Source of the DNA: Macrostomum lignano
Taxonomy: Eukaryota
Reading direction: 5' to 3'
Assembly (NCBI GenBank): GCA_002269645.1
Contig: NIVC01002255.1
Span: 125,510-189,509 of the forward strand
Length of the DNA stretch: 64,000 bases
Under the pieces are notes generated by a model. It saw only the letters and a list, made by a program, of their open reading frames with translations. It ran no database searches and was not told where the DNA came from. How positions within the stretch are numbered: the stretch's first letter is position 1; every line of letters begins with the position of its first letter. Of this stretch, positions 339-39,344 are shown piece by piece. The translations under genes and the position numbers were made by a program.

Positions 339-344
339 CAAACC

Positions 345-14414: not shown

Positions 14415-14745
14415 AGGGGAGTAAGGACACCTGAGCGTGATTTTTCATCATGCTCTTAACATTTCTGAAGCTCTCAAAATTTTTCAAGCACGGAAATTGC
14501 TATAGTTATGCTTGAACTCATGTTGCTGTATATTTATATTATTATTACACATACTTTTATGCATACGAGCTACATACATATTTTATTCGAAAAGCTGCTT
14601 AGTTTATTCAGCTATAATATTGAACCCAATGCAGAAAGGGTTATGCTTTTAAAAAGCCAGTAAATTCAGTCGGTTTTTTCATTTTTTAATGATTCAGAAA
14701 TGTTAAGAGCATGATGAAAAATCACGCTCACGTGTCATTACTCCC

Positions 14746-15502
14746 CTGGTGCCACCTGTTGAAGGTGCCGACGGCGTCGGGGTGATGACGGAATGCTTGA
14801 CTGACTAGCTGAGGATGTCCAGCAGTTGATTTTTGCCCACTATCGAGGCTTGATCAGCGAAATTAGAGAAATTATTATCAGGCTGTCCATAGTCAGCTGG
14901 TGTAATCTGTTGAAGGAGCCGACGACGTCGGGATGATGACGGAATGCTTGAGAGACTAGCTGAGGGTGTCCGGCAGTTTAGGCTTGCCTACTGTCGAGGC
15001 TTGATCGGTGAAACTCGAGAAGTTCGCATCAAGGTGTTCATAGTCGCCTGGTGTCATCTGTTGAAGGTGCCGACGGCGTCCGAGTGATGACTGAATGCTT
15101 GAGAGATTAGCTGAGGGTGTCCAGAAGTTGAGGCTTGCTCACTGTCGAGGCTTGATCAGCGAAACTAGAGAAATTCGCATCAAGGTGTTCATAGTCGCCT
15201 GGTGTCATCTGTTGAAGGTGCCGACGGCGTCGGGGTGATGACTGAATGCTTGAGAGACTAGCTGAAGATGTTTCGCGTTGAGGCTTGCCCATTGGCAAGG
15301 CTTGATCAGCGAAACTAGAGAAATTTGCATCAGGGTGTTCATAGTCACCTGGTGTAATCCGTTGAAGGTGCCGACGGCGTCGGGGTGATGATGGAAGGCT
15401 CGAGAGACTAGCTGAGGATACCTAGCAGTTGAGGTATGCCCACTGTCGAGGCTTGATCAGCGAAACTCGAGAAATTCGTATCAGAGTGTCCATAGTCACT
15501 TG
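14746..15502 (-). repeat. 151-bp tandem units x5 in the right arm of the foldback element
   Basis: Reverse-complement units with markers at ~14746, 14897, 15048, 15199, 15349, 15500. The right arm is ~150 bp shorter than the left, consistent with one unit fewer. Confidence 0.9.
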
Positions 15503-16820
15503 GTGCCACCTGTTGAAGGTCCAGAAGCTCCGCCTGGGTGAAGGCTAGTGACCAACGAAGTCAGAGCTGATGCAGACACATGTGGTCGACGTGCTGATGA
15601 AATTTGGAGACTTGGCAAGGCTGCACTGAGGCGCAGTGCTGATTGGCGCACAGGGGTGTACTGAATACACTAGCGCTTATGGGAAAAATCCGACCTTCTG
15701 GCAGAATCGTCGAATATCTCGACGGTCCGGAGGGCTGGCGACTTGATTCTTGTTTGAGAAGGTGCGCAACAAAAAGTTAGCCCGTGTTCTTGAATTTTGT
15801 GTGTCTGCGTTGCTCCGTTCCGGCGCAGCAAAAAAATTTGTCAGGGGGGGGGGGAAATTTTTCCCCCCCCCTTGGTAGTTCTACTGTTAATGTATGAAAT
15901 AGTTATATGAAAACTTAAGGCAGTTTTATAATACTTTATAGATAAACAAATCTTTATTATATTAATTACCTTATTGCTAAATGGATTGCTATGGCAATGA
16001 AATTGAAGAAAATTTTCAGTGTAATATATTTAGTCTGTATTAGCATTGTAAAATAAAAAGTATTTCTACTTTTTTGCATAAATCTGATTCAGTCAATACA
16101 ACAAAGATAGGATGCAAATAAAAAAGTCTGTCTTTGTAAATACTGAAATTTAATTGTATAAAGTGCAATAAAAATAGTTCATAAAATAAAATAGCTTCAA
16201 ACTGTGTATAGGCAAGCAATTTTATTAAAAGGAAAGTTTAGCCCTATTTATTGTAGTATGTCAAATAAATAGGGTTCTAGATGAATTGACTTATACGAGC
16301 CATAAATAGCAACCAAACGGATACCAATGTTGATACCAGTATAAGAAGTTCAAGTGCTCTATAAAAACTAGATATCTAAACAAATGACTCATAACTGCTA
16401 ACATACTTAGACATACAGCAGGTGATAAATCATTACAAAATATTTTTTCTGAAGTTCTTAATGAGACAAAAGTTATGTTTGTATTTAGAATGCTGTTAAA
16501 TTTCTTTTGGTAAGAGGCAACGAAAAGGGAATTTGGATTAAAAAATACAATTTGTATGCACACGAGCAAAGGCAAAGTGTAGACCCCGTGTCGGCCATAG
16601 CTCAATCGGGACCGGACATGGCGAACAAATTCAAATTATGATGTCTTTTACTGCGATAGTATGTTGCTTTAATTATGTTGCTTTCCGACTTAAAGTTTTT
16701 TAACAAGCTTTAAAAGAAGTAACTTTTTATATTTTAATTTAGAAAATATAGAAAATTACTGTATACATTGTTAGACTATAACCAACTAAAACATCCGGAA
16801 ATGTTCTAAGCCATTTATTT

Positions 16821-18033: not shown

Positions 18034-21000
18034 ATGTCCGACGAGAAGGCTGCCGACGACTCCAGTTCTACATTCAGCCAAGCAATCCATCTGTTGCGGC
18101 TCATGCTCAGGCTAAAATTATGGAAGTTCCTCTTCTGGATCCTACTAATACCAACTCTATTTTTAAACTTTCTGATAATGCAGAGATTGGAAAAAAAGAA
18201 TCCAGACACGGTGTCGGGGCCAAGCGTCAAGTCGTTGTCAGCTGCTGAAGCGGCCAATTGGAAGGTGCTCATTGCCAGGCAAGCAGCCATCGAAGCAGGT
18301 ACATTAAAAGCAATCGCGCAAAACAGAGGAGTAAAAAGCGGCAGCAGCTGGTTGACAAGGTGCGGCGAAACAGAAGCGTGCCAGATTCGACTTTATGGAG
18401 TCAATAGTCTCGCTGTCCGATGCGAACTCGAGCATTCATGAAGTTTGAGAGGCGAGTTACCGAGTTTTATTGTTTGGACGGCTCTAGATCAGATCTAATC
18501 TGTTCCTATCTGTTTCACCTGATGCATCAGTCCATGGATTCAGGTGGCGCCACCGCCGCCTCAGTGTTCAAAGATGTTAATTTTATCAAGCTGTATGACC
18601 GATTCGAGAGTGAAACAATGAAACGAGAATGGTTGAAAGCAAAAATCGACGCTCCGGATTCGTTGTGCACGCGATCGGCGAAAAACAGTGGCGCATTTTT
18701 CGACTATTTTCCTCGTTACTTTATGTTGCACCTTCTGGTGGTGGCATCAGCAATGACGCTCTACTTCACTGTCAGCACACTGTCAGGAGTCGCCGGGCTC
18801 AAGGAAAATGGCTTCCTGCAGCTGATGTTCTGCAATGGACTCTCCGTAGCTGCCTACTGGATTGTCATGTGGCTTATTACCTTAGTTGAATTACTCACCA
18901 TGTCTGCCCTATTTGTTATCTCGTACGGCATACAGTGTCCCGGATTCTTCTCTCCTGAAGGCCTGTTCAAATCATTTCTTACTCTGCTGTGCTTTTTCGT
19001 ACTTCTAGCCTCGCTGGGACTGCTTGTAACAACGCTTGTGGGCTCATATTTTGTAACTTTACTAGTGATGATAGTCTTCAATGTGATACTGGCATTTTGC
19101 GCTCTGGTCTGCAGGCAACAAGTGGCTTCCGCCGCTGGTAGGCGGGGCAATCACGTAGCCGGAGCCATGGTAATGCTTGTGTTCCCGCCTGGCAACATTG
19201 TTGAGTACCTGCTAGAGGCTATGCTGCCAAAAAGTCCAGCTAACAGAAGACCCACTGGGTACGAGCCATACTACCAGAGTATAGAGGTCTTATTATCCGT
19301 GCTTCCAATTATTTTCATCATACTGACGATATACCTAGACTTCGTAGTAAAGAATGGGAACGGACTGTGTCTGCCTTTCATGTATCCGTTCAATCCGAGC
19401 TTCTGGAATCCTCATCGGCAGAAGCTCATCGAGATGGTTGACGAGCAGCCCAAGCGGGCCAACGTTGAGCCCACAGTCGGCGTTCCGGCGGTCATTGCCG
19501 ATGACATTCACCTGACTTATCCGTCCGGCTGCTGCGAAGCAAAGAAGCCTCCAGTTCTGAAGGGCATCACATGTGAGTGTCCTTGCATGAGTTAGCTGCT
19601 GCTTTTCACATCCAACTGGGGGTAAAAGCAACAAAGGACCTTTGAAACGCATTTGCACTCCAGGCACCGTCTACCAGGGACAGATCACTGCACTGATCGG
19701 ACACAACGGAGCGGGAAAGACTACGCTTATTCGAGTGCTCATGGGCGAGGAGATTCCCAGCCGCGGCGTCGCCGTCATCAACGGCCACCGAGTGACGGAT
19801 CCGTACCAGCGACTCGCGCTCAGAGGCAGCGTTAGCATCTGCAAACAGGTCGACGTGCTCAGCAACTACCTCACCGTGATGGAGAGCATGAAGCTGACTC
19901 TCGTAGCCAAGGGTTTCAGTCCGGATAGCCAAGTCGCAAAGGTGCTCGACATGATGAAGAGGCTGGGACTCGCCGGCAAGGAGAACGTGCAGGCCATGGA
20001 CTTGAGCGGAGGTCAAATGCGAAAGGTGTGCAGCATAATTTGCCTGTTGGGGAACCCGAAGCTCGTGATCCTGGACGAGCCAACGAGCGGTCTGGACCCG
20101 GTGTCGAGACGAAATCTGTGGCAGATCCTCCAAGATCACAAGGCCGGTAGATCCATTATCCTGTGCACGCAGTTCATGGACGAGGCAGACATTCTGGCAG
20201 ATCGCAAGGTATTTCTGTCAGCTGGCAAGATTATATGTGCCGGCTCGTCCATGTTTTTGAAAAACGCATTTGGCTGCTGCGTGTCTATCAATGTTTCCCT
20301 GAAATCGGTTGAGTTCGCCCGGCCGCTAGTGAAATGTCTTACAAAAGTGAAGCTAGTGAGCCAGATGCACACTGAGCTGCTACTGAACGTGTCAGCCGAC
20401 AAACCGCAATTCCTAGCAGATGCTATCCAAGTTTTGGAGGAGCACAAAGAGTGGGTGGAAGCGTTTGGAGTCTCCCAAGCCCAGCTGGACACCATATTTA
20501 TGCGTTTGCGGCACATCGATCTGGAAAATATTGAAGCGTCATTCAGGTCGAAGAAGCTCCGGAAAGCTGGCAGAGCTGAGCGAGCAGAAGCGGCCGTAGT
20601 TCCGGTAAACTATGACGCGCTGTACAACTTTGAGTCCAAGTCGCCGATTTTGGCCACTCAACGGCAGCAGTTTTGCACCCTGCTGGCTATGAACTTCAAT
20701 CGGCAGAAAAAGTTTGGCGTCAAGTTTAGCCTTCGATTTCTTTTTCCAATAATACTCGTCATAGTAGTAGCTTCGATGGTTGACAGTGAGAGGACTGAGG
20801 AGGCAGACGCGCAACAGGCAGCAATCGGAGGCAAAAGCTCAAAGGCGATGGTCCGAACCCTTGTTCAGGACTTTCATCCGATAACTCAGTTTGGCATCTG
20901 TGTGTTCGACAGCGACAACAATGACGCAAGCGCTACAGATCTGGTGACGAAGGAGTGTAACGCAATGTTTGACGTAACAGAACCGGAAGCGAATCAAGTG

Positions 21001-24000
21001 AAAGTAGTTCCAAAAAGTCCCAGCGTCACTATGAAGGACTTTCTAAAGCAAGCTGACGTGTTGCAAACGATACGAAAGCTGTGTAGAATTTCGTTTTGCT
21101 TCATTTTGCATTCGTCCTCTTGGAATAGGAACGACTCCAACCGGGTCAGAGAGGTGCACATTGGTCAATACACGGTTCCACCGGATGTTGACATCCCAAA
21201 TGCAGCCGCCATCTCTGTCGGACACATGCTGACTATCTACCTGAAGTTTTCAAAACACTTCAAGGCTGTGCCTCGCAGTAACGCGCCCAATCTTACTATA
21301 AAACGAGCATACACGTTCAATACTTTTGAGAGCTTCGAATTTACAAAGAGTTACGAATTGCTCATGTTCATAACAGCGTTCTCCATTGTGCCGATCACGT
21401 ACCTGAATGATCCCATTGAGGACAGGGACTGCGGTGTGCGTCAACAGCTGCGGTCGATGGGAATGCGGTCTCTGGCTTATTGGTTGAATAATTTTATCCT
21501 GCACTGGACTCACTACATGATCTATTTCTTACTGTCCGCAGCTGCCTGCATGGTGTGGGACCGGTACCAGAGTCAGTTCTTCTTTGTCAATGTGTGCCTA
21601 CCAGTGCTCATCTTCGGCACTGCCAGCTGTCTGCTGTCAGTCTACGTTGTCAGCGCGCTTATGAAAAAGTCCAACCCGGTTGTAATTGTCAGCTGCTTCT
21701 TTTTTGCTCTGTTTCTTGGCGTGGTTGCCAACATTGCTCAGAACAGTAGCACAGCTATGCTCATTCTGATCTGCTTCCTTCCGCAGTTCACGCCAGTGGC
21801 TTACATACTACTCAGTGTGAAATTAATGATCTACTCGTTGTACTTTCTCGAAGTGAAAAACCCCGACAACGTGCTGAATTTGGCTAACTTGCATCTTAGC
21901 AACAGTAATATCTTAGTCTCTTTGATTGCGATGCCTGTGCACTGTGTTCTTCTGGTACTACTACTGATATTGGCAGAGAATCCTGCTGGTATTAAACTTG
22001 CATTCAAAAAGCCTGACCTCGAGAAAGGTTCAGAACTGGAAAAAACAATAAAAGACACTGGCGTACCATTGGAAGCCGAGCGAATTAACAAGACGCCAAG
22101 GAATCCATTGAACATGCTCGAAGTCCGCGACCTTCAAAAGGTCTATCCGAACGGAGTGCACGCGGTGCGAGGCACCACCTTCGGCTCCTTCTCCGGCGAG
22201 ATTCTCGGCTTGCTGGGCCCCAACGGAGCCGGAAAGACCACCAGCATGTCCATCATTGTCGGCGAGGAGGCCAGCTCGAGCGGCACCAGCGAAGTGCACT
22301 TCGGCGGCACTTGGATGTCCGGGATAGACGGCGCCAGATGCGGCGCCATTGGCTACTGTCCGCAGCACAACCCGCTGTTCAACAGCGTCTCTGTGTTCGA
22401 GCACCTCCGCTTCTACGCGCAGATCCGCGGCATCCCGGACCAGCTGGGCAGCGCGCAGATCGCCGGACTCATCGAAGGTCTCGGACTGAAGCCGCACCAG
22501 CACAAGGCGGCCGAGCAGCTGTCCGGAGGAAACAAGCGGCGCCTCTGTCTGGCCATCGCGCTGCTCGGCAACCCGTCGCTAGTGGTGATCGACGAGGCCT
22601 CGACCGGAGTCGATCCGGAGAACAAGCGCTTCATCTGGGGCGCCATTCGAGGCATGGCGAACAAGCAACGCTCGGTGATGATCACCACGCACAGCATGGA
22701 GGAGGTCGAGGCGCTGTGCGCTCGCGTCGGCATCATGAACAAGGGCCTGATGATCGGGTTCGGCACCGTGCAACAGCTGCGCAGCCGGTGAGCATAACAC
22801 TTTTCAGTGTTTTCTGGTGCTTCCTAGTTCTAGACTTTAAAAAATACTAAAAAGGAATTCCTAATTTCCAAACGAAAAGCTTTATGAATATCAATAGAGC
22901 TACAAGAAAGGCAATACATATCAAAAAATGAACACTGGGTCTTCCTTCTTTTAAAAACAATAACAATGTTTTTGCTGAAACTAAAAAACGCCCATCTCCG
23001 AAGTGCATATTTCGGTTAAACCTGTCTCTTAAACCATCTCCGAAGTGCATATTTCGGTAAAACCTGTCTCCTAAACCATCTCCGAAGTGCATATTTCGGT
23101 AAAACCTGTCTCCCAAACCATCTCCGAAGTGCATTTTTCGGTAAAACCTGTCTCCCAAACCATCTCCGAAGTGCATATTTCGGTAAAACCTGTCTCCTAA
23201 ACCATCTCCGAAGTGCATATTTCGGTAAAACCTGTCTCCTAAACCATCTCCGAAGTGCATATTTCGGTAAAACCTGTCTCCTAAACCATCTCCGAAGTGC
23301 ATTTTTCGGTAAAACCTGTCTCCCAAACCATCTCCGAAGTGCATATTTCGGTAAAACCTGTCTCCCAAACCATCTCCGAAGTGCATTTTTCGGTAAAACC
23401 TGTCTCCCAAACCATCTCCGAAGTGCATATTTCGGTAAAACCTGTCTCCCAAACCATCTCCGAAGTGCATATTTCGGTAAAACCTGTCTCCTAAACCATC
23501 TCCGAAGTGCATATTTCGGTAAAACCTGTCTCCTAAACCATCTCCGAAGTGCATTTTTCGGTAAAACCTGTCTCCCAAACCATCTCCGAAGTGCATATTT
23601 CGGTAAAACCTGTCTCCCAAACCATCTCCGAAGTGCATATTTCGGCAAAACCTGTCTCCCAAACCATCTTTGAAGTGCATTTTTCGGTAAAACCTGTCTC
23701 CCAAACCATCTCCGAAGTGCATTTTTCGGTAAAACCTGTCTCCCAAACCATCTCCGAAGTGCATTTTTCGGTAAAACCTGTCTCCCAAACCATCTCCGAA
23801 GTGCATTTTTCGGTAAAACCTGTCTCCCAAACCATCTTTGAAGTGAATTTTTTCGGTAAAACCTGTCTCCCAAAAATTTTCAAGAAACGTATCTTCTCAT
23901 CGATTTTTTTCTCGCCGAGGTTTGCCTGCAATGCTTTTTTTCCTGCAGCGCATTTTAGCCATTCGGCAGATTATATATCTGCATTGCCTCCTCAATGCTT

Positions 24001-24642
24001 AGCAAATCTTAATTATGAGATTTACCCGATCAAAACGTTTGGATAGTAACTGCATATCAAATTTAATTTTTTCTTGTAGGTATTCAGTTTTATATACATG
24101 CTGAATACATGCTGGTACATCGGTGAGCTTTTGATTCATGCGTACGCCGTGTCGCTTTGTTTCCCAAATCTCTTTTTTAAAGACTTTATAAAGGGCAAAC
24201 CTCGGCGGGAATAGCTCGGCGGACAATTCTCGTGCTCCCAAACGTCGGCCTTCTACTTGAGTAGTCTTTGAGCATTAACTGTAGCTTGTCTTGCAATCTG
24301 ACTAACAACCCAGTCATTATACTAACCCACCGTTCTATTCAGGCACGGGGAAGCCTACACCCTCGACGTGCTCATGCAAGCCAAGACTGCTTCAAAGTTG
24401 GCCGTGAAAAAGCGGAAGCTGACCAAAATGATTCTGAAACAATTCAAAGGCGCCGTCGTTATGGAGGATCTGCTGCGGTGCATGCAGTTTGTCATACCGA
24501 GATCGGCTGTAAAAATCTTTTCAGAAGCAATTCGGCTGCTACTATTAAAGAAGAAAAAATGGGAATTCGAACGTTTTGTCTTTATCAGATGTCGCTGGAC
24601 CAGGTGTTTGTGAAGCTGGTTAAAGAGCACGATGATACTTAA
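18034..24642 (+). CDS. ABCA-subfamily full transporter, copy 1 (type P); exons 18034-19572, 19664-22787, 24343-24642; two 1-bp frame disruptions (~18420, ~24558)
   Basis: TMD-NBD-TMD-NBD layout. Walker A GHNGAGKT and GPNGAGKT, signatures LSGG, Walker B VILDEP and VVIDEA, ABCA-type C-terminal QMSLDQVF. GT-AG junctions keep the frame. The exon sum is 4963 nt, 2 short of the 4965 nt of copies 2 and 3. Confidence 0.85.
22992..23872. repeat. 42-bp satellite (~21 copies) in intron 2 of ABCA copy 1
   Basis: Unit CCATCTCCGAAGTGCAT(A/T)TTTCGGTAAAACCTGTCTCC(C/T)AAA; produces the 14-aa repeat ORFs. Confidence 0.97.
23890..24239. mobile_element. Right portion of a MITE of the same family as 16821-17367
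   Basis: Shares TTTTTT(C/T)(C/T)CGCCGAGG...CAATGC...TTTCCTGCAGCGCAT and ends in ATTCTCGTGCTCCC, the reverse complement of the left TIR at 16821. A duplicate lies at ~31925-32273. Confidence 0.75.
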
Positions 24643-24884
24643 AAAGGTTCAATTCTTATCTAGCCTTAAACTTTACTTTTTTTTAAGTAATATTTTACCG
24701 ACGTAACGTATTCAAACTTGCGCATTCTTAAATAACAATATACGCGCCTAATATATATACCACATAATTACTATGAAAATACAAACAATTCACAAATATT
24801 TAAATGAAAAAATAATCAACATAAATGAAAATAACTATATTCAGTTTGTTTGGTGTCGTTTGGTCTTTTCTCGATGGATTTTGC

Positions 24885-25080
24885 TCTATTGAGTATAAAA
24901 AAGAACGAGAAGTTGTTCTAGCTCGTAAAAAACCTCAATGTTCACATTCGTGTTGTTTTTCGCACCGAAAAGATTGCGCGGTTTTTGAGCAATCTGAAAT
25001 CTAGTGGGCCTCGACCTCTCGCTGCAGGTGTTGTTTACAAATTTAGTTGTTTCGATGACCAGAGAATTTCCTACATAGAA
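24885..25080 (+). mobile_element. Penelope-like retroelement fragment (GIY-YIG endonuclease N-terminal region)
   Basis: Translates as VHIRVVFRTEKIARFLSNLKSSGPRPLAAGVVYKFSCFDDQRISYI, matching the PLE pattern V.F....L...LS..K......GVVY.F.C....YIG. A duplicate lies at ~32920-33115. Confidence 0.6.
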
Positions 25081-25828
25081 TCAGCTATAGAATTTACTGT
25101 GCACTCTCAAAGATGGCGATTTCTTAATGTTGTTCAGTATAGTTCTTTCCTTTTATGTTTATTATTGCTTTCATTTATTTGCTCTTCGTCAAGCGAGCTT
25201 TACAGGCATCCTGACTCAACGCCCTCAGCGACAACGCCCCATAACCAGTTGTTGTTGGAGGCAGGGGCTTTGTGCACCTGGCAAACTTTAAGCGACATGT
25301 CACACAAGCGGTGAGAGGCATCACTGCCCATTGTCGGCTGATTTTCCATGCAAGAATGGCATTCTTGCACTCTTTTGCGTGCAGGAATGGATGTCTATGG
25401 TAAAATCTCACTGAAAAAGCATTAGGCGCAGAAATGCATTCCTGCACGGTTTTGTGCATTCCTGCACGATGAATCATCCGACAATGGAATTCCTTCACGT
25501 TCACTCGTGCGTGAAGGACATCGTGCACTCGTGACCGTGCAGGAATATATCATTCCGCCGATTCCCCTGAGCAGGCACACAAGCGCGCGGATACGTACGC
25601 AGTCATATGCACAGGCACACACTCACACAGGAGTGTACAGCAGCCCCAACTTTATTTATAGTTAGGCATGTACACTTCACTTTATTTATCGTTAACCGAT
25701 AACGATGTACGTAATTTTCATCGGCGGTATGCGGCGGTGTTCAATAATTGTTTATTTAGGTGAAAAAATCCGTCCCAGCATTAAAAAGCGGACTATGGAT
25801 GCAACGAATTCAAGTTATCAAGTAGAAG

Positions 25829-25873
25829 CCAAGGACAACTTGATAACTTGACAAGTTATCAAGTTGTCCTTGG
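25829..25873. repeat. Perfect 22-bp-arm palindrome with 1-nt spacer, ~190 bp upstream of the ABCA copy 2 ATG
   Basis: CCAAGGACAACTTGATAACTTG-A-CAAGTTATCAAGTTGTCCTTGG; duplicate at 33864-33908. Confidence 0.95.
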
Positions 25874-26066
25874 TAGAAGCAATAAATTTAGTTCGGCCAT
25901 AGACAATATTTTTGAATTATGACCGCAGAAAAGTAAAACTATAAAGTGCCTAATAGAAAAATTTAAAAGCCGTCTAAAGTAATTTAGCTAGCTTAAAGCC
26001 TAGCTATTAAACCGCGACTATATCTCCTGAGCAGTTATTGTGTACTAACAGCAGCTCAGCGTCTTC

Positions 26067-29000: not shown

Positions 29001-32000
29001 ATTGAATACGCGGTATCTTGAGGTGGCAATCAAGGATATGAAGACCAGCGTTGGCAAGTTCGTTCAGACGCCGGAAGTAAAAAAGAAGTTTCGCAAAATC
29101 TGCCCAAAGTCGTCGAAAAATTTTGTTATTAATTGTTTTTTCGTTTATTCTACCGACTGGAACAGTCACTCGAATAACTCGAGACGGCTGCTCTACCACG
29201 GTGTTTATGAGAACCCAGTCGATGAAGAGGATGAAAGCGCTAGAGAAAAGGGAGTTTTTGCTGCTATGCAGTATTACGACTTTGCAGCTGAGTACTTTGA
29301 GGCTAATGCCAAATCAAAATCCAGAAACTTCACCTTGGCGAGCGTCTATTTAGCTGAGACAATCGACTCTTTTAAGTTTGAAAAGTGCCAAGAGCTGTTT
29401 ATGCTGCTGGCCGCTTTCGCGTTGGTGCCAGTAACGTATCTGAATGACCCGATCGAGGACAAGGACAGCGGCGTTCGTCAGCATCTAGCGTCCATGGGAA
29501 TGAGCAGTATCGCCTACTGGTTTACCACTTTTGTGATGCACTGGTTGCACTATATACTTTGCTTCTTTTCCATGGCCTTGACTTGTCTGATGGTAGAAAA
29601 GTATCAAAGTGCCTACTTCCTTGTGTACATGGTGCTGCCACTGACATTCTTGGGTACATCGTGTAGTCAACTAACAGTTTACGTTGTCAGCGCAATGATG
29701 AAGAAGACGAACGCAATTGTTTTGGTTCTTTACTTTTTCTTTGCCATGTTTTTAGGCATGGCGGGCAGCTACTTTCAAGACAATGAATCGGTTCTGTATG
29801 CCATGATGATAATAATACCGCCCTTCCCGCCGCTGCTTGTGATGCTGATGGGTACAAAGATGCTGCTCTACACAATACTGCTATTTGAAACATCAAACCC
29901 GGCCGACGTGCCTAATATTAGAGACGTATTATTTGCCAACTCGCACGTGGTCTACTCTTTTATTGTGATGCCCATACACATTGCGATTTTAATTGGCCTC
30001 ATTTTCATAATTGAAAACCCGGGAGCTCTTGCCAGTTTGTTTGCAAAGAATATCGAAGCATCAAAACAAACGCCAAAACCGCTGAAAGACGAAGGAGTTG
30101 GAATTGAAGCCAACAGGATCAGAAAGACGACGAGGAGCTCGGTGAACATGCTCGAAGTCCGCGATCTTCAAAAGGTCTATCCGAACGGAGTGCACGCGGT
30201 GCGAGGCACCACCTTCGGCTCCTTCTCCGGCGAGATTCTCGGCTTGCTGGGCCCCAACGGAGCCGGAAAGACCACCAGCATGTCCATCATTGTCGGCGAG
30301 GAGGCCAGCTCGAGCGGCACCAGCGAAGTGCACTTCGGCGGCACTTGGATGTCCGGGATAGACGGCGCCAGATGCGGCGCTATTGGCTACTGTCCGCAGC
30401 ACAACCCGCTGTTCAACAGCATCTCTGTGTTCGAGCACCTCCGCTTCTACGCGCAGATCCGCGGCATCCCGGACCAGCTGGGCAGCGCGCAGATCGCCGG
30501 ACTCATCGAAGGTCTCGGACTGAAGCCGCACCAGCACAAGGCGGCCGAGCAGCTGTCCGGAGGCAACAAGCGGCGCCTCTGTCTGGCCATCGCGCTGCTC
30601 GGCAACCCGTCGCTAGTGGTGATCGACGAGGCCTCGACCGGAGTCGATCCGGAGAACAAGCGCTTCATCTGGGGCGCCATTCGAGGCATGGCGAACAAGC
30701 AACGCTCGGTGATGATCACCACGCACAGCATGGAGGAGGTCGAGGCGCTGTGCGCTCGCGTCGGCATCATGAACAAGGGCCTGATGATCGGGTTCGGCAC
30801 CGTGCAACAGCTGCGCAGCCGGTGAGCATAACACTTTTCAGTGTTTTCTGGTGCTTCCTAGTTCTAGACTTTAAAAAATACTAAAAAGGAATTCCTAATT
30901 TCCAAACGAAAAGCTTTATGAATATCAATAGAGCTACAAGAAAGGCAATACATATCAAAAAATGAACACTGGGTCTTCCTTCTTTTAAAAACAATAACAA
31001 TGTTTTTGCTGAAACTAAAAAACGCCCATCTCCGAAGTGCATATTTCGGTTAAACCTGTCTCTTAAACCATCTCCGAAGTGCATATTTCGGTAAAACCTG
31101 TCTCCTAAACCATCTCCGAAGTGCATATTTCGGTAAAACCTGTCTCCCAAACCATCTCCGAAGTGCATTTTTCGGTAAAACCTGTCTCCCAAACCATCTC
31201 CGAAGTGCATATTTCGGTAAAACCTGTCTCCTAAACCATCTCCGAAGTGCATATTTCGGTAAAACCTGTCTCCTAAACCATCTCCGAAGTGCATATTTCG
31301 GTAAAACCTGTCTCCTAAACCATCTCCGAAGTGCATTTTTCGGTAAAACCTGTCTCCCAAACCATCTCCGAAGTGCATATTTCGGTAAAACCTGTCTCCC
31401 AAACCATCTCCGAAGTGCATTTTTCGGTAAAACCTGTCTCCCAAACCATCTCCGAAGTGCATATTTCGGTAAAACCTGTCTCCCAAACCATCTCCGAAGT
31501 GCATATTTCGGTAAAACCTGTCTCCTAAACCATCTCCGAAGTGCATATTTCGGTAAAACCTGTCTCCTAAACCATCTCCGAAGTGCATTTTTCGGTAAAA
31601 CCTGTCTCCCAAACCATCTCCGAAGTGCATATTTCGGTAAAACCTGTCTCCCAAACCATCTCCGAAGTGCATATTTCGGCAAAACCTGTCTCCCAAACCA
31701 TCTTTGAAGTGCATTTTTCGGTAAAACCTGTCTCCCAAACCATCTCCGAAGTGCATTTTTCGGTAAAACCTGTCTCCCAAACCATCTCCGAAGTGCATTT
31801 TTCGGTAAAACCTGTCTCCCAAACCATCTCCGAAGTGCATTTTTCGGTAAAACCTGTCTCCCAAACCATCTTTGAAGTGAATTTTTTCGGTAAAACTTGT
31901 CTCCCAAAAATTTTCAAGAAACGTATCTTCTCATCGATTTTTTTCTCGCCGAGGTTTGCCTGCAATGCTTTTTTTCCTGCAGCGCATTTTAGCCATTCGG

Positions 32001-32677
32001 CAGATTATATATCTGCATTGCCTCCTCAATGCTTAGCAAATCTTAATTATGAGATTTACCCGATCAAAACGTTTGGATAGTAACTGCATATCAAATTTAA
32101 TTTTTTCTTGTAGGTATTCAGTTTTATATACATGCTGAATACATGCTGGTACATCGGTGAGCTTTTGATTCATGCGTACGCCGTGTCGCTTTGTTTCCCA
32201 AATCTCTTTTTTAAAGACTTTATAAAGGGCAAACCTCGGCGGGAATAGCTCGGCGGACAATTCTCGTGCTCCCAAACGTCGGCCTTCTACTTGAGTAGTC
32301 TTTGAGCATTAACTGTAGCTTGTCTTGCAATCTGACTAACAACCCAGTCATTATACTAACCCACCGTTCTATTCAGGCACGGGGAAGCCTACACCCTCGA
32401 CGTGCTCATGCAAGCCAAGACTGCTTCAAAGTTGGCCGTGAAAAAGCGGAAGCTGACCAAAATGATTCTGAAACAATTCAAAGGCGCCGTCGTTATGGAG
32501 GATCTGCTGCGGTGCATGCAGTTTGTCATACCGAGATCGGCTGTAAAAATCTTTTCAGAAGCAATTCGGCTGCTACTATTAAAGAAGAAAAAGATGGGAA
32601 TTCGAACGTTTTGTCTTTATCAGATGTCGCTGGACCAGGTGTTTGTGAAGCTGGTTAAAGAGCACGATGATACTTAA
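26067..32677 (+). CDS. ABCA transporter, copy 2 (chimera: Q-type body with P-type last intron and exon); exons 26067-27585, 27677-30821, 32377-32677; 1654 aa
   Basis: Exon sum 4965 nt, in frame. Donor GTGAGT/GTGAGC and acceptor CAG; CTAAC branch motifs before exon 3; all NBD motifs present. Confidence 0.9.
31026..31906. repeat. 42-bp satellite (~21 copies) in intron 2 of ABCA copy 2
   Basis: Same variant order as 22992-23872 (the 327-aa repeat ORFs are identical). Confidence 0.97.
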
Positions 32678-34101
32678 AAAGGTTCAATTCTTATCTAGCC
32701 TTAAACTTTACTTTTTTTTAAGTAATATTTTACCGACGTAACGTATTCAAACTTGCGCATTCTTAAATAACAATATACGCGCCTAATATATATACCACAT
32801 AATTACTATGAAAATACAAACAATTCACAAATATTTAAATGAAAAAATAATCAACATAAATGAAAATAACTATATTCAGTTTGTTTGGTGTCGTTTGGTC
32901 TTTTCTCGATGGATTTTGCTCTATTGAGTATAAAAAAGAACGAGAAGTTGTTCTAGCTCGTAAAAAACCTCAATGTTCACATTCGTGTTGTTTTTCGCAC
33001 CGAAAAGATTGCGCGGTTTTTGAGCAATCTGAAATCTAGTGGGCCTCGACCTCTCGCTGCAGGTGTTGTTTACAAATTTAGTTGTTTCGATGACCAGAGA
33101 ATTTCCTACATAGAATCAGCTATAGAATTTACTGTGCACTCTCAAAGATGGCGATTTCTTAATGTTGTTCAGTATAGTTCTTTCCTTTTATGTTTATTAT
33201 TGCTTTCATTTATTTGCTCTTCGTCAAGCGAGCTTTACAGGCATCCTGACTCAACGCCCTCAGCGACAACGCCCCATAACCAGTTGTTGTTGGAGGCAGG
33301 GGCTTTGTGCACCTGGCAAACTTTAAGCGACATGTCACACAAGCGGTGAGAGGCATCACTGCCCATTGTCGGCTGATTTTCCATGCAAGAATGGCATTCT
33401 TGCACTCTTTTGCGTGCAGGAATGGATGTCTATGGTAAAATCTCACTGAAAAAGCATTAGGCGCAGAAATGCATTCCTGCACGGTTTTGTGCATTCCTGC
33501 ACGATGAATCATCCGACAATGGAATTCCTTCACGTTCACTCGTGCGTGAAGGACATCGTGCACTCGTGACCGTGCAGGAATATATCATTCCGCCGATTCC
33601 CCTGAGCAGGCACACAAGCGCGCGGATACGTACGCAGTCATATGCACAGGCACACACTCACACAGGAGTGTACAGCAGCCCCAACTTTATTTATAGTTAG
33701 GCATGTACACTTCACTTTATTTATCGTTAACCGATAACGATGTACGTAATTTTCATCGGCGGTATGCGGCGGTGTTCAATAATTGTTTATTTAGGTGAAA
33801 AAATCCGTCCCAGCATTAAAAAGCGGACTATGGATGCAACGAATTCAAGTTATCAAGTAGAAGCCAAGGACAACTTGATAACTTGACAAGTTATCAAGTT
33901 GTCCTTGGTAGAAGCAATAAATTTAGTTCGGCCATAGACAATATTTTTGAATTATGACCGCAGAAAAGTAAAACTATAAAGTGCCTAATAGAAAAATTTA
34001 AAAGCCGTCTAAAGTAATTTAGCTAGCTTAAAGCCTAGCTATTAAACCGCGACTATATCTCCTGAGCAGTTATTGTGTACTAACAGCAGCTCAGCGTCTT
34101 C

Positions 34102-37100
34102 ATGGCGGAAGGACAGTCTGGCGCATTCGGAACTCAGTTCGCGTACCTGCTGTTTCTAGTACTGCGCCTCAAGTCCTGGAAGTTCCTGCTCTGGATACTG
34201 CTAGGACCCAGTCTGTTCTTCAACTTCTTTCTGTACAGGAACATCGAGGACAAGGAGGAGGGCGGCGTAAAGTCGAACGGCCTTACTGAACTGAAAATGT
34301 CGGTGGCCATGGCTCACGGAGCTCTAGTGCCTACCAGCAGTCGCGAGAAGAAGTCCCTGATTGAAATAATGCAGCTGAGAAAAGCGAAGAGCCGGTCTTG
34401 GTTTAAAGACTGCAAAGACATCAACGACTGTCGAATCCAACTGGCAAAGGCTGTCTCCGCAAAGAGTAGTGAAAAAACCTCCATTTTTATTTACGGAAAG
34501 AATAAAACGATCCGGCTTTATTGCCTCAAGGACAAAAATGCTGAGATTCTGTGCCCGTTCCTCTATCACGCAATGTCGCAATCGCTTGAGTCCTACGAAT
34601 ACGCCAGGGCAAAGAGTTCAAAAGCGCAAACCGCTCTGTATAAGGATATAATGTTTGCTAAATTTTTCGACAAGTTTGGATCCTCGAGCGACGGTGTCGG
34701 TTTAAATATTTCTAAACCAGATTCCATGTGCACTCGAACAAGCAAGTCTGGTACGTTTTTTATCAAATTTATAATGTACTTCATGGGTCACATGATCATC
34801 GTGCTGGCATCCTTCATTTTGTACACGACCGTCGGGTCTCTGTCTAGCATGAGCAATCTAAAAGAGAATGGCTTTCTGCAGCTGGTATTCAACAATGGCC
34901 TGTCCGTAACAGTGTATTGGTTAGTGTACTGGACCATTGGAGCCATCGAGGCGCTGATTCCAGCCACATTGTTAGTCATGTCCTACTCATTTCAATGCCC
35001 CGGCTATTATGAATCGTCCGGATTAACAAACTTCTTCATCACGGTGGCTGCCATGTTCTTTTTTCTGACTGCTCTCGGCTATTTATTTGCGACGCTTATT
35101 GCATCATTTTTTATCGTACTACTGCTCATGATTGTCATCCAGATCGTCTGCTGTGGAGTGATCATAATGGCCAAACTTTGGATTTTCCAAAAGAAGCCGC
35201 TGAGCACAATTAACACTTTTCTAGCATTTCCTCCTGGTTGCATCGTAGAGTATGGCACAAAATATTTACTACCAAAAGAGGCCCCCTTTCACAAGTATTT
35301 CAAGCCGTACGGAAGCTTTTTTGACAGCGTTCAAATCAATATGATCGTATTCGCAATTCTTATTATAATAACTACTATATACCTGGACTTCGTAGTAAAG
35401 AATGGGAACGGACTGTGTCTGCCTTTCATGTATCCGTTCAATCCGAGCTTCTGGAATCCTCATCGGCAGAAGCTCATCGAGATGGTTGACGAGCAGCCCA
35501 AGCGGGCCAACGTTGAGCCCACAGTCGGCGTTCCGGCGGTCATTGCCGATGACATTCACCTGACTTATCCGTCCGGCTGCTGCGAAGCAAAGAAGCCTCC
35601 AGTTCTGAAGGGCATCACATGTGAGTGTCCTTGCATGAGTTAGCTGCTGCTTTTCACATCCAACTGGGGGTAAAAGCAACAAAGGACCTTTGAAACGCAT
35701 TTGCACTCCAGGCACCGTCTACCAGGGACAGATCACTGCACTGATCGGACACAACGGAGCGGGAAAGACTACGCTTATTCGAGTGCTCATGGGCGAGGAG
35801 ATTCCCAGCCGCGGCGTCGCCGTCATCAACGGCCACCGAGTGACGGATCCGTACCAGCGACTCGCGCTCAGAGGCAGCGTCAGCATCTGCAAACAGGTCG
35901 ACGTGCTCAGCAACTACCTCACCGTGATGGAGAGCATGAAGCTGACTCTCGTAGCCAAGGGTTTCAGTCCGGATAGCCAAGTTGCAAAGGTGCTCGACAT
36001 GATGAAGAGGCTGGGACTCGCCGGCAAGGAGAACGTGCAGGCCATGGACTTGAGCGGAGGTCAAATGCGAAAGGTGTGCAGCATAATTTGCCTGTTGGGG
36101 AACCCGAAGCTCGTGATCCTGGACGAGCCAACGAGCGGTCTGGACCCGGTGTCGAGACGAAATCTGTGGCAGATCCTCCAAGATCACAAGGCCGGTAGAT
36201 CCATTATCCTGTGCACGCAGTTCATGGACGAGGCAGACATTCTGGCAGATCGCAAGGTATTTCTGTCGGCTGGAAAGATTATATGTGCCGGCTCGTCCAT
36301 GTTTCTCAAGCATGCATTCGGCTGCTGTGTGTCTATCAACGTGACTCTTAAACATGAAAAAGACGCTACCAAGGTTGTAAAAATGCTCAAGAAAGTAAAG
36401 CTAGTTGGTAGTTATCAAACTGAGCTGCAGCTTCAAGTTTCGGCGGGTAAGCCGCAGGCACTCGCCGATGCAATTTACACTTTGGAGCAGCACCCGGAAC
36501 TTGTCGATGCTTTCGGAGTGTCGCAAGCGCAGCTGGACGACATTTTTATGCGTCTAAAATTCATCGACTTGGATAACATCGAGGCGTCGTTTAAGTCGAA
36601 GCAGCTAAGGAAGCTGGGAAGATCGGGAGGCGGCGGCAGCGCTGGAGTCGAGCGAGTGAACTTCAGCTCGCTGTACAATTTCGAAAGTACCAAACCGCTG
36701 AATGCCACTTTTGCGAATCAGTTTTTGGCCCTGATTCGAATGAACTTCAGCCGACAACTCAAAGCAAAAATGACATTTTGCTTTCGAATTATATTTCCTC
36801 TAATAATGATTGGGATTATTGGCCAAATGTGCTACTTGGAAAACAAGGACAAAGAAAAGAAGCCAGGCAAAGACAAAGACAAAGAGCAAAACGCTGCAGA
36901 ACAACCTTCCGTCGCAATCATTAATATGAACTCGAGCGACATGCGGAACTCCTTGGCTATATCTCGGGGAGTCTGTATCGCGGACAAGGAGTCTGGTGTG
37001 ACAAATACGACTCTGACAAGGTTGTGTGGTATGGCATTGAATACGCGGTATCTTGAGGTGGCAATCAAGGATATGAAGACCAGCGTTGGCAAGTTCGTTC

Positions 37101-39344
37101 AGACGCCGGAAGTAAAAAAGAAGTTTCGCAAAATCTGCCCAAAGTCGTCGAAAAATTTTGTTATTAATTGTTTTTTCGTTTATTCTACCGACTGGAACAG
37201 TCACTCGAATAACTCGAGACGGCTGCTCTACCACGGTGTTTATGAGAACCCAGTCGATGAAGAGGATGAAAGCGCTAGAGAAAAGGGAGTTTTTGCTGCT
37301 ATGCAGTATTACGACTTTGCAGCTGAGTACTTTGAGGCTAATGCCAAATCAAAATCCAGAAACTTCACCTTGGCGAGCGTCTATTTAGCTGAGACAATCG
37401 ACTCTTTTAAGTTTGAAAAGTGCCAAGAGCTGTTTATGCTGCTGGCCGCTTTCGCGTTGGTGCCAGTAACGTATCTGAATGACCCGATCGAGGACAAGGA
37501 CAGCGGCGTTCGTCAGCATCTAGCGTCCATGGGAATGAGCAGTATCGCCTACTGGTTTACCACTTTTGTGATGCACTGGTTGCACTATATACTTTGCTTC
37601 TTTTCCATGGCCTTGACTTGTCTGATGGTAGAAAAGTATCAAAGTGCCTACTTCCTTGTGTACATGGTGCTGCCACTGACATTCTTGGGTACATCGTGTA
37701 GTCAACTAACAGTTTACGTTGTCAGCGCAATGATGAAGAAGACGAACGCAATTGTTTTGGTTCTTTACTTTTTCTTTGCCATGTTTTTAGGCATGGCGGG
37801 CAGCTACTTTCAAGACAATGAATCGGTTCTGTATGCCATGATGATAATAATACCGCCCTTCCCGCCGCTGCTTGTGATGCTGATGGGTACAAAGATGCTG
37901 CTCTACACAATACTGCTATTTGAAACATCAAACCCGGCCGACGTGCCTAATATTAGAGACGTATTATTTGCCAACTCGCACGTGGTCTACTCTTTTATTG
38001 TGATGCCCATACACATTGCGATTTTAATTGGCCTCATTTTCATAATTGAAAACCCGGGAGCTCTTGCCAGTTTGTTTGCAAAGAATATCGAAGCATCAAA
38101 ACAAACGCCAAAACCGCTGAAAGACGAAGGAGTTGGAATTGAAGCCAACAGGATCAGAAAGACGACGAGGAGCTCGGTGAACATGCTCGAAGTCCGCGAT
38201 CTTCAAAAGGTCTATCCGAACGGAGTGCACGCGGTGCGAGGCACCACCTTCGGCTCCTTCTCCGGCGAGATTCTCGGCTTGCTGGGCCCCAACGGAGCCG
38301 GAAAGACCACCAGCATGTCCATCATTGTCGGCGAGGAGGCCAGCTCGAGCGGCACCAGCGAAGTGCACTTCGGCGGCACTTGGATGTCCGGGATAGACGG
38401 CGCCAGATGCGGCGCTATTGGCTACTGTCCGCAGCACAACCCGCTGTTCAACAGCATCTCTGTGTTCGAGCACCTCCGCTTCTACGCGCAGATCCGCGGC
38501 ATCCCGGACCAGCTGGGCAGCGCGCAGATCGCCGGACTCATCGAAGGTCTCGGACTGAAGCCGCACCAGCACAAGGCGGCCGAGCAGCTGTCCGGAGGCA
38601 ACAAGCGGCGCCTCTGTCTGGCCATCGCGCTGCTCGGCAACCCGTCGCTAGTGGTGATCGACGAGGCCTCGACCGGAGTCGATCCGGAGAACAAGCGCTT
38701 CATCTGGGGCGCCATTCGAGGCATGGCGAACAAGCAACGCTCGGTGATGATCACCACGCACAGCATGGAGGAGGTCGAGGCGCTGTGCGCTCGCGTCGGC
38801 ATCATGAACAAGGGCCTGATGATCGGGTTCGGCACCGTGCAGCAGCTGCGCAGCCGGTGAGCACTCGTTATGCTGAAAAATAGTCAGTTTTGCTGTGAAA
38901 ACTAACTTGTGTTTTTATTAAGGCATTTAGGAATCGTTTTGGACTAAATTTGCAAAAACTTCACCAACTGAAACGCTCTCCCACAAACTTAAGAAACACC
39001 GTTGAAAATTTTACCTTATAATTATTTTTACCTTCCACAACAGGCACGGAGAGGCGTACACTCTGGACGTTCTGATGAAGTCAAAAAAGCCGCAAAAGTT
39101 GGCACTGAAGCGAAGCAAACTGGCCAAGCGGATTATCAAACAGTTTCCCGAGTCTGTAGTGATGGAGGACCTTGAGCGGAGCATGCAATTCAGCTTGCTA
39201 AAGAAGAGTGTACCAAAGTTCTCGGAGGCAATGCGTTGGCTAATTGCTAAAAAGAAAAAGCTGGGCATACAATATTTCTCGCTGTACCAAATGTCGCTTG
39301 ACCAAGTGTTTGTTAAACTGGTCAAGGAGTACGATGAGTCCTGA
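34102..39344 (+). CDS. ABCA transporter, copy 3 (type Q); exons 34102-35620, 35712-38856, 39044-39344; 1654 aa
   Basis: Identical to copy 2 through most of exon 2. It has a short 187-bp intron 2 without the satellite and a divergent last exon (RHGEAYTLDVLMKSKK...QMSLDQVFVKLVKEYDES). Confidence 0.9.

What the first reader, a model, noticed from the sequence alone, without database searches (positions are those of the whole stretch)
18034..39344. ABCA paralogues with domain-restricted concerted evolution: identical NBDs, divergent membrane domains
Seen: between types P and Q, tracts ~19331-20255 vs ~27344-28268 (NBD1, including an identical 91-bp intron) and 22109-22792 vs 38178-38861 (NBD2) are nearly identical, while exon 1, TMD2/ECD2 and the last exon differ at many residues. 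The homogenised tracts also look more GC-rich. An identical intron cannot be explained by protein-level selection. Inference: ongoing gene conversion, possibly GC-biased, keeps the ATPase modules interchangeable while the substrate-facing parts diversify - a 'constant engine, variable substrate module' array.
Basis: partly seen in the sequence, partly recalled or inferred. Interest (0 to 1): 0.72.

Follow-up and report, generated by a model that had tools for sequence, protein, structure and literature searches.

The report
Gene-converted ATPase domains in ABCA paralogues
Two ancient neighbouring lipid-pump (ABCA) genes of the flatworm Macrostomum lignano have had only their two ATPase-coding segments overwritten by recent gene conversion, and one identical segment then served as the crossover point for a very recent 8-kb duplication that made a third, chimeric gene. 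It is a clean example of a process already known from other tandem gene families.

Summary
P and Q match at 920/925 bp (NBD1, including a 91/91 identical intron) and 679/684 bp (NBD2). Elsewhere in the genes synonymous sites are saturated (pS 0.77-0.82) and amino-acid identity is 37-63%. At fourfold sites in identical codons, 245/254 match inside the tracts against 62/190 outside (p=1.5e-51). Selection on the protein therefore cannot explain the identity; ectopic gene conversion can. GC3 is higher in the tracts (0.70 and 0.85, against 0.54-0.62).

- The "array" is P + Q plus an 8,034-bp tandem duplication. Its two copies have no differences over 6.2 kb, and its crossover lies inside the NBD2 tract. 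The middle gene is therefore a Q-body/P-tail chimera.
- A second Macrostomum lignano contig carries the two-gene state without the duplication.
- The window's P copy has three frameshift indels, so its "exon 1/exon 2" split is not an intron.

Tract boundaries are the same in both contigs, and the four copies form a star-like tree. The main homogenisation therefore happened at about the time the two genomic copies separated, with only modest evidence for later events. GC-biased conversion fits the data but is not shown. The adaptive "constant engine" reading is untested. Close precedents are regional conversion in protocadherin clusters and the Pichia ABC11-ABC1 pair, so this is a new member of a known kind.

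The parts
18034..24642 (+). ABCA gene P. Coding segments are 18034-19572, 19664-22787 and 24343-24642. It carries three frameshift indels (extra T at 18386, extra A at 18425, missing G at 24558) that are absent from the copy on contig L001.
26067..32677 (+). ABCA gene Q1. Exons are 26067-27585, 27677-30821 and 32377-32677, giving an intact 1654-aa protein (= P0001). It is a chimera: Q body joined to P-type intron 3 and last exon ('tail-a').
34102..39344 (+). ABCA gene Q2. Exons are 34102-35620, 35712-38856 and 39044-39344, giving an intact 1654-aa protein with the Q-type last exon ('tail-b').
19338..20256 (+). NBD1 conversion tract in P (919 bp). It runs from the last residues of TM6 through NBD1 and includes the 91-bp intron 19573-19663. 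Four substitutions separate it from Q.
27351..28269 (+). NBD1 conversion tract in Q1 (intron 27586-27676)
35386..36304 (+). NBD1 conversion tract in Q2 (intron 35621-35711), covering Q2 residues 429-704
22109..22794 (+). NBD2 conversion tract in P (686 bp). It ends 7 bp into intron 3. No P/Q difference is fixed within it.
30143..30828 (+). NBD2 tract in Q1. It is Q-like at 30165, 30381, 30421 and 30564, and P-like at 30807 and downstream. The crossover interval is therefore 30565-30806.
38178..38863 (+). NBD2 conversion tract in Q2, covering residues 1329-1555
22072..38863 (+). Tandem duplication of 2.09 units of 8,034/8,035 bp (22072-30828 = 30106-38863, 99.76%). There are no differences between 24559-30806 and 32594-38841 (6,248 bp).
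22992..23874 (.). 42-bp satellite (21 copies) inside intron 3 of P. An identical-length copy lies at 31026-31908 in intron 3 of Q1.
31026..31908 (.). 42-bp satellite copy in intron 3 of Q1

Best explanation
The window comes from Macrostomum lignano (assembly Mlig_3_7, contig NIVC01002255.1). P and Q are ancient tandem ABCA paralogues: silent sites are saturated wherever they have not been homogenised. Ectopic (interlocus) gene conversion has overwritten two separate segments, NBD1 plus its 91-bp intron (about 0.9 kb) and NBD2 (about 0.7 kb), so that these are more than 99% identical. Because the two tracts are separated by 1.85 kb of unalignable sequence, at least two events are required. Both tracts are equally young (0.4-1.2% divergence), which argues for a recurrent process rather than a single accident (inference).

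The likely reason the tracts are confined to the NBDs is mechanical. NBDs are the slowest-evolving part of ABC proteins, so they alone keep enough identity to seed homologous recombination, and the diverged flanks stop heteroduplex extension (inference).

The same homology then supported an unequal crossover between P-NBD2 and Q-NBD2. This duplicated 8,034 bp and created Q1, a Q body with the P-type intron 3 and C-terminal exon. The second genomic copy (L001) keeps the two-gene state that preceded the duplication.

The high GC3 of the tracts fits GC-biased repair during repeated conversion, but this is not demonstrated.
For: Identity and boundaries. Saturated dS outside the tracts against near zero inside. 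Silent-site and run tests. The identical intron. Each copy has its own private variants, and the tracts recur in a second contig and in proteins from the older ML2 assembly (P0002/4/6/7), so they are not a collapsed consensus. Duplication: the two units differ only in the P/Q edge zone, at 4 NBD2 sites, at 1 satellite site, at 1 indel and at 30807/38842, with 6,248 bp identical. The variant switch places the crossover at Q1 30565-30806. L001 has P'-Q' only, in the same synteny. Both gene types are under purifying selection. ABCA identity. Precedents for the mechanism.
Against: No outgroup species or read data were available, so neither recurrence nor the direction of conversion is shown. Within the tracts the four copies form a star rather than clustering by locus, so full-tract conversion after the split of the two contigs is not demonstrated. 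Mlig_3_7 is a fragmented long-read assembly of a neopolyploid in which expanded or collapsed haplovariants are a recognised risk, so the 8-kb duplication could be a loop traversed twice. No Q-body/tail-a protein is seen outside this assembly. Private changes in the tracts are biased S>W, which gives no direct support for GC-biased conversion.
Confidence: 0.8

Rival explanations
1. There is no DNA exchange. The NBD segments are identical because ATPase domains are under extreme purifying selection, on the protein or on codon usage.
For: NBDs are the most conserved part of ABC transporters, and amino-acid identity in the tracts is about 100%.
Against: Fourfold degenerate sites match at 245/254 inside the tracts and 62/190 outside. 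A 91-bp intron is identical. Identity ends 7 bp into intron 3. Conserved but unconverted protein segments (R1, 65-75% amino-acid identity) have saturated pS.
Confidence: 0.01
2. The identical NBD tracts are an assembly or polishing artefact, a consensus collapsed across paralogues.
For: Mlig_3_7 comes from a neopolyploid in which 93% of read pairs map to several places and mis-represented haplovariants are expected.
Against: Each of the four independent copies has its own private substitutions within the tracts (P 5, P' 5, Q 2, Q' 10). The same tracts with the same edges are present on a second contig. P-type and Q-type proteins from the separate ML2 assembly also share the NBD sequences. Tracts shorter than 1 kb are easily spanned by long reads.
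Confidence: 0.03
3. The conversion tracts are real, but the 8,034-bp tandem duplication (gene Q1) is an assembly loop artefact. The true locus is P-Q, as on L001.
For: The two units are 100% identical over 6.2 kb and have the same satellite length. A 686-bp repeat bounds the unit. No Q-body/tail-a protein is seen in ML2-derived entries. Expanded haplovariants are a known risk.
Against: Long-read assemblers tend to collapse identical tandem copies rather than invent them. The two units carry small private differences (23863, 24558, 30807/38842). The junction shows a coherent switch from Q-like to P-like variants. The same kind of 2-to-3-gene expansion is documented for tandem ABC genes in Pichia kudriavzevii.
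Confidence: 0.22
4. The reverse history applies. P and Q are recent duplicates, and their divergent parts (N-terminus/TMD1, R1/TMD2, last exon) were imported from distant paralogues, leaving the NBDs as the unreplaced remnant.
For: It would also give a mosaic of identical and divergent blocks.
Against: It needs at least three imports per gene and donor genes carrying P-like or Q-like TMDs. The protein search found only P- and Q-type sequences in M. lignano, and the next relatives are at most 33% identical. The gene structures also differ (intron 3 is 1.55 kb with a satellite in P and 187 bp in Q).
Confidence: 0.03
5. One reading: selection favours conversion that keeps the ATPase modules interchangeable while the substrate-facing domains are driven apart.
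For: The tracts coincide with the NBD domains. Both gene types are under purifying selection. Boundaries are conserved between genomic copies.
Against: Domain-limited tracts are expected without selection, because only the NBDs keep enough identity to recombine. There is no sign of current diversifying selection (omega 0.02-0.2 on recent branches). P-Q dS is saturated, so dN/dS of the ectodomains cannot be estimated. One P copy appears to be decaying (three frameshifts).
Confidence: 0.12

Closest known systems
Regional gene conversion in clustered protocadherin genes (fugu, zebrafish, human)
   Same: Tandem paralogues have one region more than 99% identical at the DNA level and another region divergent. 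Synonymous-site identity is used to exclude protein constraint. GC3 is significantly higher in the homogenised region (PMC1852091).
   Different: That case involves many variable exons within one cluster and a single converted 3' block. Here there are two whole genes with two separate converted blocks, one of which includes an intron, and the gene family is ABCA in a flatworm.
Pichia kudriavzevii (Candida krusei) ABC11-ABC1 tandem PDR pumps
   Same: These are tandem ABC-transporter paralogues homogenised by recurrent ectopic gene conversion. Ectopic recombination between them contracts the array to a one-gene chimera or expands it to three genes (Lamping et al. 2017, as summarised in PMC6053246).
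   Different: Those genes belong to the ABCG/PDR subfamily and are about 98% identical overall. Here the genes are ancient paralogues with saturated divergence, and only the two NBD segments are homogenised.
Mosaic concerted evolution of duplicated genes in general (e.g. RHD/RHCE, opsins, Hsp70; models of Innan and Teshima). Cited from my own knowledge.
   Same: Conversion is confined to part of the duplicated unit, and flanking divergence acts as a barrier. Conversion and unequal crossover are two outcomes of the same ectopic pairing.
   Different: Nothing differs in principle. This is a further instance in a new gene family and phylum.
ABCA subfamily transporters (ABCA1/3/4/7)
   Same: The architecture is TMD1-NBD1-TMD2-NBD2, there is an extracellular domain after TM1 and after TM7, and the best PDB matches have E about 1e-105.
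   Different: The ectodomains are short (about 190 aa each), identity to any characterised ABCA is only 27-33%, and no R-domain Pfam hit was found. This is a lineage-specific pair of unknown substrate.

Membership tests
ABCA subfamily of ABC transporters | Full-transporter order TMD-NBD-TMD-NBD with two Walker A / signature / Walker B sets | tested here: met
   Pfam ABC_tran x2 (E=7.8e-53). Motifs at Q2 residues 519/620/640 and 1365/1466/1486.
ABCA subfamily of ABC transporters | ABC-2 type membrane domain, and closest similarity to ABCA rather than to other subfamilies | tested here: met
   PF12698 E=1.8e-13. The top PDB hits are ABCA3/4/1/7 at 1e-99 to 1e-105, against 1e-33 for ABCB.
ABCA subfamily of ABC transporters | Large extracellular domain between TM1-TM2 and between TM7-TM8 | tested here: met
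   The hydropathy scan places about 190 aa between TM1 (16-34) and TM2 (223-241) and about 195 aa between TM7 (862-880) and TM8 (1077-1095). This is a crude window method, and the domains are much shorter than in ABCA1/4.
ABCA subfamily of ABC transporters | Lipid/sterol translocase activity | not testable with these tools
   No functional data.
Ectopic (interlocus) gene conversion / mosaic concerted evolution | Silent-site and non-coding identity inside the tract, with saturated divergence in the flanks and sharp edges | tested here: met
   pS is 0.006-0.05 inside against 0.77-0.82 outside. The intron is 91/91 identical. Fisher 1.5e-51.
Ectopic (interlocus) gene conversion / mosaic concerted evolution | Tree incongruence: within the tract, paralogues are as close as or closer than the same gene in another genomic copy | tested here: met
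   In the tracts P-Q is 4-5 substitutions, P-P' 5-7 and Q-Q' 6-8. Outside the tracts P and Q are saturated while P-P' is 0.77%.
Ectopic (interlocus) gene conversion / mosaic concerted evolution | Independent, repeated events in separate lineages (truly 'ongoing') | tested here: inconclusive
   The boundaries are the same in both contigs and the tree is star-like. Only site 19649, the contrast of 0 differences (window) against 8 substitutions plus an indel (L001) in 19338-19832, and the conflict at 22773 hint at later events. No other species were available.
GC-biased gene conversion | Elevated GC3/GC in converted segments compared with unconverted segments of the same genes | tested here: met
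   GC3 is 0.70 and 0.85 against 0.54-0.62. The converted intron has GC 0.47 against 0.31-0.40 for other introns.
GC-biased gene conversion | Excess of W>S over S>W changes attributable to conversion | tested here: not met
   Private changes since homogenisation are 17 S>W against 4 W>S (p=0.007). This shows that GC is above mutational equilibrium, but it gives no direct sign of biased repair.
Tandem duplication by non-allelic homologous recombination (unequal crossover) | Direct repeat whose junction lies in a pre-existing homologous segment, with a switch of paralogue-specific variants in the junction gene | tested here: met
   Q1 is Q-like at 30165-30564 and P-like from 30807 onward.
Tandem duplication by non-allelic homologous recombination (unequal crossover) | Existence of the unduplicated arrangement | tested here: met
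   L001 (contig NIVC01004193.1) has P'-Q' only, with the same upstream gene.
Tandem duplication by non-allelic homologous recombination (unequal crossover) | Read-level support for the duplicated arrangement | not testable with these tools
   No reads available.

The most novel reading that the evidence does not exclude
The homogenised NBD islands may act as standing recombination 'sockets' that let divergent membrane, ectodomain and C-terminal modules be reshuffled between ABCA paralogues. Q1 (Q body with P tail) would be a natural product. Selection, helped by GC-biased repair, would keep the islands identical because interchangeable ATPase modules and module shuffling are advantageous.
Probability: 0.1. 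Interest if true: 0.6.

Novelty: new member of a known kind. Interest (0 to 1): 0.35.

Why it matters
This is an unusually clean natural example of two points. First, gene conversion can be confined to the catalytic modules of multi-domain transporters whose other domains diverged long ago. Second, the resulting islands of identity become substrates for unequal crossover that creates chimeric genes. In practice it warns annotators and phylogeneticists working on Macrostomum, and on ABC families in general: NBD-based trees will mislead here, and identical tracts cause chimeric gene models. The NCBI model P0003 is an example, because it jumps from P' to Q' inside NBD1. It does not change current understanding of gene-family evolution.

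Tried and rejected
- **Related species.** I looked for orthologues in other species to test whether conversion recurs. The protein search returned only M. lignano sequences, and the next hits are at most 33% identical. The locus-fetching collections hold no eukaryote genomes, so the comparative test could not be run.
- **Downstream gene calls.** I tried to look up the spliced Q2 protein to list the called genes downstream. I scanned the flanking ORFs against Pfam instead.
- **Cluster at 18845-18944.** I considered whether these 9 P/P' differences are a small conversion from Q. The alleles do not match Q, so I rejected this. They may come from a third subgenome copy.
- **Cluster at 20562-20567.** I considered this a micro-conversion, since P' matches Q' at three sites. 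The possible tract is bounded by fixed differences to 7 bp or less, which is too short to call. It remains unexplained.
- **dN/dS of the ectodomains between P and Q.** This cannot be estimated because dS is saturated.
- **Literature.** Searches for gene conversion restricted to NBDs in ABCA genes found no direct precedent. Two papers that tested ABC paralogues with GENECONV found no conversion. The Lamping 2017 paper itself is not held in the library, so I cite it through PMC6053246.
Full report
**Source and genes**

The window is Macrostomum lignano, assembly GCA_002269645.1 (Mlig_3_7), contig NIVC01002255.1. Locus L002, fetched through the annotated protein P0005, is 100% identical to window 8420-34613.

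Three ABCA-type genes lie on the + strand:
- P: 18034-24642.
- Q1: 26067-32677.
- Q2: 34102-39344.

I built the gene models from open frames, splice motifs and tblastn. Q1 and Q2 each encode an intact protein of 1654 aa.

The proteins carry two ABC_tran domains and an ABC2_membrane_3 domain. Their best solved relatives are ABCA3, ABCA4, ABCA1 and ABCA7 at E about 1e-105, against 1e-33 for ABCB. A hydropathy scan gives the ABCA layout: TM1, an ectodomain of about 190 aa, TM2-6, NBD1, TM7, an ectodomain of about 195 aa, TM8-12, NBD2. Outside M. lignano the nearest proteins are only 27-33% identical.

**Checking the observation**

- The NBD1 tracts match at 920/925 bp and the NBD2 tracts at 679/684 bp.
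- The intron at 19573-19663 is 91 bp and identical in all three genes.

A five-copy table of variable sites (P, Q1, Q2, plus P' and Q' from a second contig) places the tract limits at P 19338-20256 and 22109-22794. Dozens of fixed P/Q differences lie immediately outside these limits. Only one lies inside, at 20220.

On a codon alignment of the intact P' and Q', the three unconverted regions have pS of 0.77-0.82, which is saturated, and amino-acid identities of 37%, 42% and 63%. The tracts have pS of 0.006-0.05.

Two tests show this is not protein constraint:
- Fourfold sites in codons that encode the same amino acid match at 245/254 inside the tracts and 62/190 outside (Fisher p=1.5e-51).
- The longest run of third-position matches is 121 codons. 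The maximum in 10,000 permutations was 25.

Protein-level selection cannot explain the pattern.

Self-comparison shows that 22072-30828 equals 30106-38863 at 99.76%. The differences between the two units are:
- 14 sites in 22078-22108, the P/Q edge zone;
- four NBD2 sites (22131, 22347, 22387, 22530);
- one satellite site (23863);
- one 1-bp indel (24558);
- one site at 30807/38842.

Between 24559-30806 and 32594-38841 there is no difference at all over 6,248 bp.

In the NBD2 tract, Q1 carries the Q state at the first four variable sites and the P state at 30807. Downstream, Q1 has P's intron 3 (1.55 kb, with a 42-bp satellite) and P's last exon. Q2 has a 187-bp intron and a last exon that is only 63-65% identical.

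This is the signature of an unequal crossover between P-NBD2 and Q-NBD2, with the exchange at Q1 30565-30806. Q1 is a Q-body/P-tail chimera.

The state before the duplication exists. Contig NIVC01004193.1 (L001) has the same upstream syndecan-domain gene and is 99.4% identical to the window across P, but it carries only P' and Q', and Q' has the Q-type tail. Q1 and Q2 are identical, whereas Q2 and Q' differ by 0.3-0.9%. The duplication is therefore younger than the split of the two contigs, and the two-gene state is ancestral.

M. lignano is a neopolyploid whose assembly mostly holds three subgenome copies that differ by 1.4-2.4% in SNPs. Mis-represented haplovariants are a recognised risk in this assembly (PMC10733133). 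I therefore put about 0.2 on the duplication being an assembly loop. Only reads can settle this.

**Are the identical tracts an artefact?**

This is unlikely, for three reasons.
- Each of the four independent copies has private substitutions within the tracts: P 5, P' 5, window Q 2, Q' 10.
- The tracts recur with the same edges on the second contig.
- P-type and Q-type proteins from the older ML2 assembly share the same NBD sequences.

**Tempo**

Substitution counts within the tracts:

| Pair | NBD1 (919 bp) | NBD2 (686 bp) |
|---|---|---|
| P-Q (Q2 for NBD2) | 4 | 5 |
| P'-Q' | 11 | 6 |
| P-P' | 7 | 5 |
| Q-Q' (Q2 for NBD2) | 8 | 6 |
| P'-Q2 | 7 | 2 |

Outside the tracts, P-P' is 0.77% and Q-Q' is 0.3-0.6%.

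The four copies therefore form a star, and paralogue distance is about equal to the distance between contigs. The tract edges are also identical in both contigs. The main homogenisation thus happened at about the time the two genomic copies separated. It has not been repeated across the full tract in each copy since then.

Hints of later exchange:
- Intron site 19649 is G in all window copies and T in both L001 copies.
- Over 19338-19832 there are 0 P-Q differences in the window, against 8 substitutions plus a 6-bp indel between P' and Q'.
- Site 22773 is shared crosswise (P, Q1 and Q' against P' and Q2).
- The unequal crossover itself shows that the NBD2 tracts still pair ectopically.

Two separate tracts are both less than about 1% diverged, against a saturated background. 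That is hard to explain unless conversion recurs. This is an inference, not a demonstration.

**GC content**

GC3 is 0.70 in the NBD1 tract and 0.85 in the NBD2 tract, against 0.54-0.62 elsewhere in the same genes (p=2e-5 and 9e-19). The converted intron has GC 0.47, against 0.31-0.40 for the other introns.

Polarising the 22 private substitutions by majority rule gives 17 S>W, 4 W>S and 1 other (p=0.007). The tracts therefore sit well above their mutational equilibrium, so something has pushed GC up. GC-biased repair during repeated conversion is the usual explanation, and it has been invoked for the same pattern in protocadherin clusters (PMC1852091). Codon-usage selection or ancestral composition are not excluded, and no W>S excess is seen.

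**Selection and gene status**

The recent branches show purifying selection. Omega is 0.17 for P-P'. Q2-Q' has 2 nonsynonymous and 30 synonymous differences. There is no evidence of current diversification of the membrane or ectodomains. Their divergence is simply old.

The window's P copy carries three frameshifting 1-bp indels, at 18386, 18425 and 24558. The other four copies carry none. This is either recent decay of one redundant subgenome copy or local long-read consensus error.

**Mechanism**

Shown:
- DNA-level homogenisation of two discrete segments.
- A chimeric third gene whose junction lies inside one of those segments.
- An unduplicated arrangement on a second contig.

Inferred:
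- Conversion is confined to the NBDs because only these slow-evolving segments keep enough identity to start homologous pairing, and the diverged flanks stop the heteroduplex. The domain coincidence therefore needs no selection.
- Conversion is recurrent.
- Conversion may be GC-biased.

**Comparison with known cases**

Regional gene conversion with raised GC3 in tandem paralogues is well documented for clustered protocadherins. Tandem ABC pumps homogenised by recurrent conversion, with ectopic recombination giving one-gene chimeras or three-gene arrays, are documented for Pichia kudriavzevii ABC11-ABC1 (Lamping et al. 2017, through PMC6053246).

I found no report of conversion restricted to both NBDs of ABCA paralogues. 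This is therefore a new member of a known kind. It is tidy and useful as a caution for annotation and phylogeny: the NCBI model P0003 jumps from P' to Q' inside the identical NBD1 tract. It would not surprise a specialist.

**Surroundings**

- Upstream, on the - strand, lies a syndecan-domain gene (10264-13017). A partial inverted copy with a broken frame lies at 3747-5958.
- A palindromic 151-bp satellite lies between that gene and P.
- Downstream, on the - strand, there are DEG/ENaC channel exons at about 56.9-58.8 kb.
- The window and L001 are 99.4% identical upstream but only 90-96% identical downstream of Q.

Noticed in passing
window 3747-5958 (+) vs 10625-12837 (-): A 2.2-kb inverted duplication (98.8%) of part of the syndecan-domain gene (917-aa ORF at 10264-13017, - strand). 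In the distal copy the frame is split into two ORFs (3609-4745 and 4718-6055), so it is either a pseudogene or an indel error.
   Followed up: partly
window 13128-15884: A palindromic satellite block: 151-bp repeats in two inverted arms (13128-14273 vs 15884-14739, 97%), lying between the syndecan-like gene and P.
   Followed up: no
window 7-339, 2594-3078, 7031-7303, 47245-47664, 60565-60842, 61145-61628: Six further short-period tandem arrays (31, 47, 15, 21, 24 and 21 bp). The window is unusually rich in satellites.
   Followed up: no
L001 10001-26177 (NCBI protein P0003, BOX15_Mlig008953g1): This annotated 1660-aa protein is a chimeric gene model. It has the P' N-terminus and TMD1, then switches to Q' inside the identical NBD1 tract, spanning 16 kb. 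It is probably an annotation artefact caused by the conversion tract.
   Followed up: partly
window 18386, 18425, 24558: Three 1-bp frameshift indels, all in the window's P copy. There are none in P', Q1, Q2 or Q'. This is either recent pseudogenisation of one subgenome copy or clustered consensus errors.
   Followed up: partly
window 18845-18944: A cluster of 9 P/P' substitutions in 100 bp of TMD1 that do not match Q. The ML2-assembly protein P0007 shows a third combination (M...A) here, which hints at exchange with a third genomic copy.
   Followed up: partly
window 20560-20567: Three adjacent P/P' differences at which P' equals Q', and at site 20562 both window copies have G while both L001 copies have A. 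This lies outside the conversion tract, and the possible patch is 7 bp or less. Unexplained.
   Followed up: partly
L001 17460-19654 and 14963-16516: Compared with the window, L001 has an extra 2.2 kb or so between P' and Q' and a 42-bp satellite about twice as long in intron 3 of P'. Identity between the contigs falls from 99.4% upstream of and across P to 90-96% downstream of Q.
   Followed up: no
window 56874-58770 (-): Two ORFs match the amiloride-sensitive sodium channel family (PF00858; E=4.9e-23 and 3.2e-5). They are probably exons of one DEG/ENaC gene.
   Followed up: no
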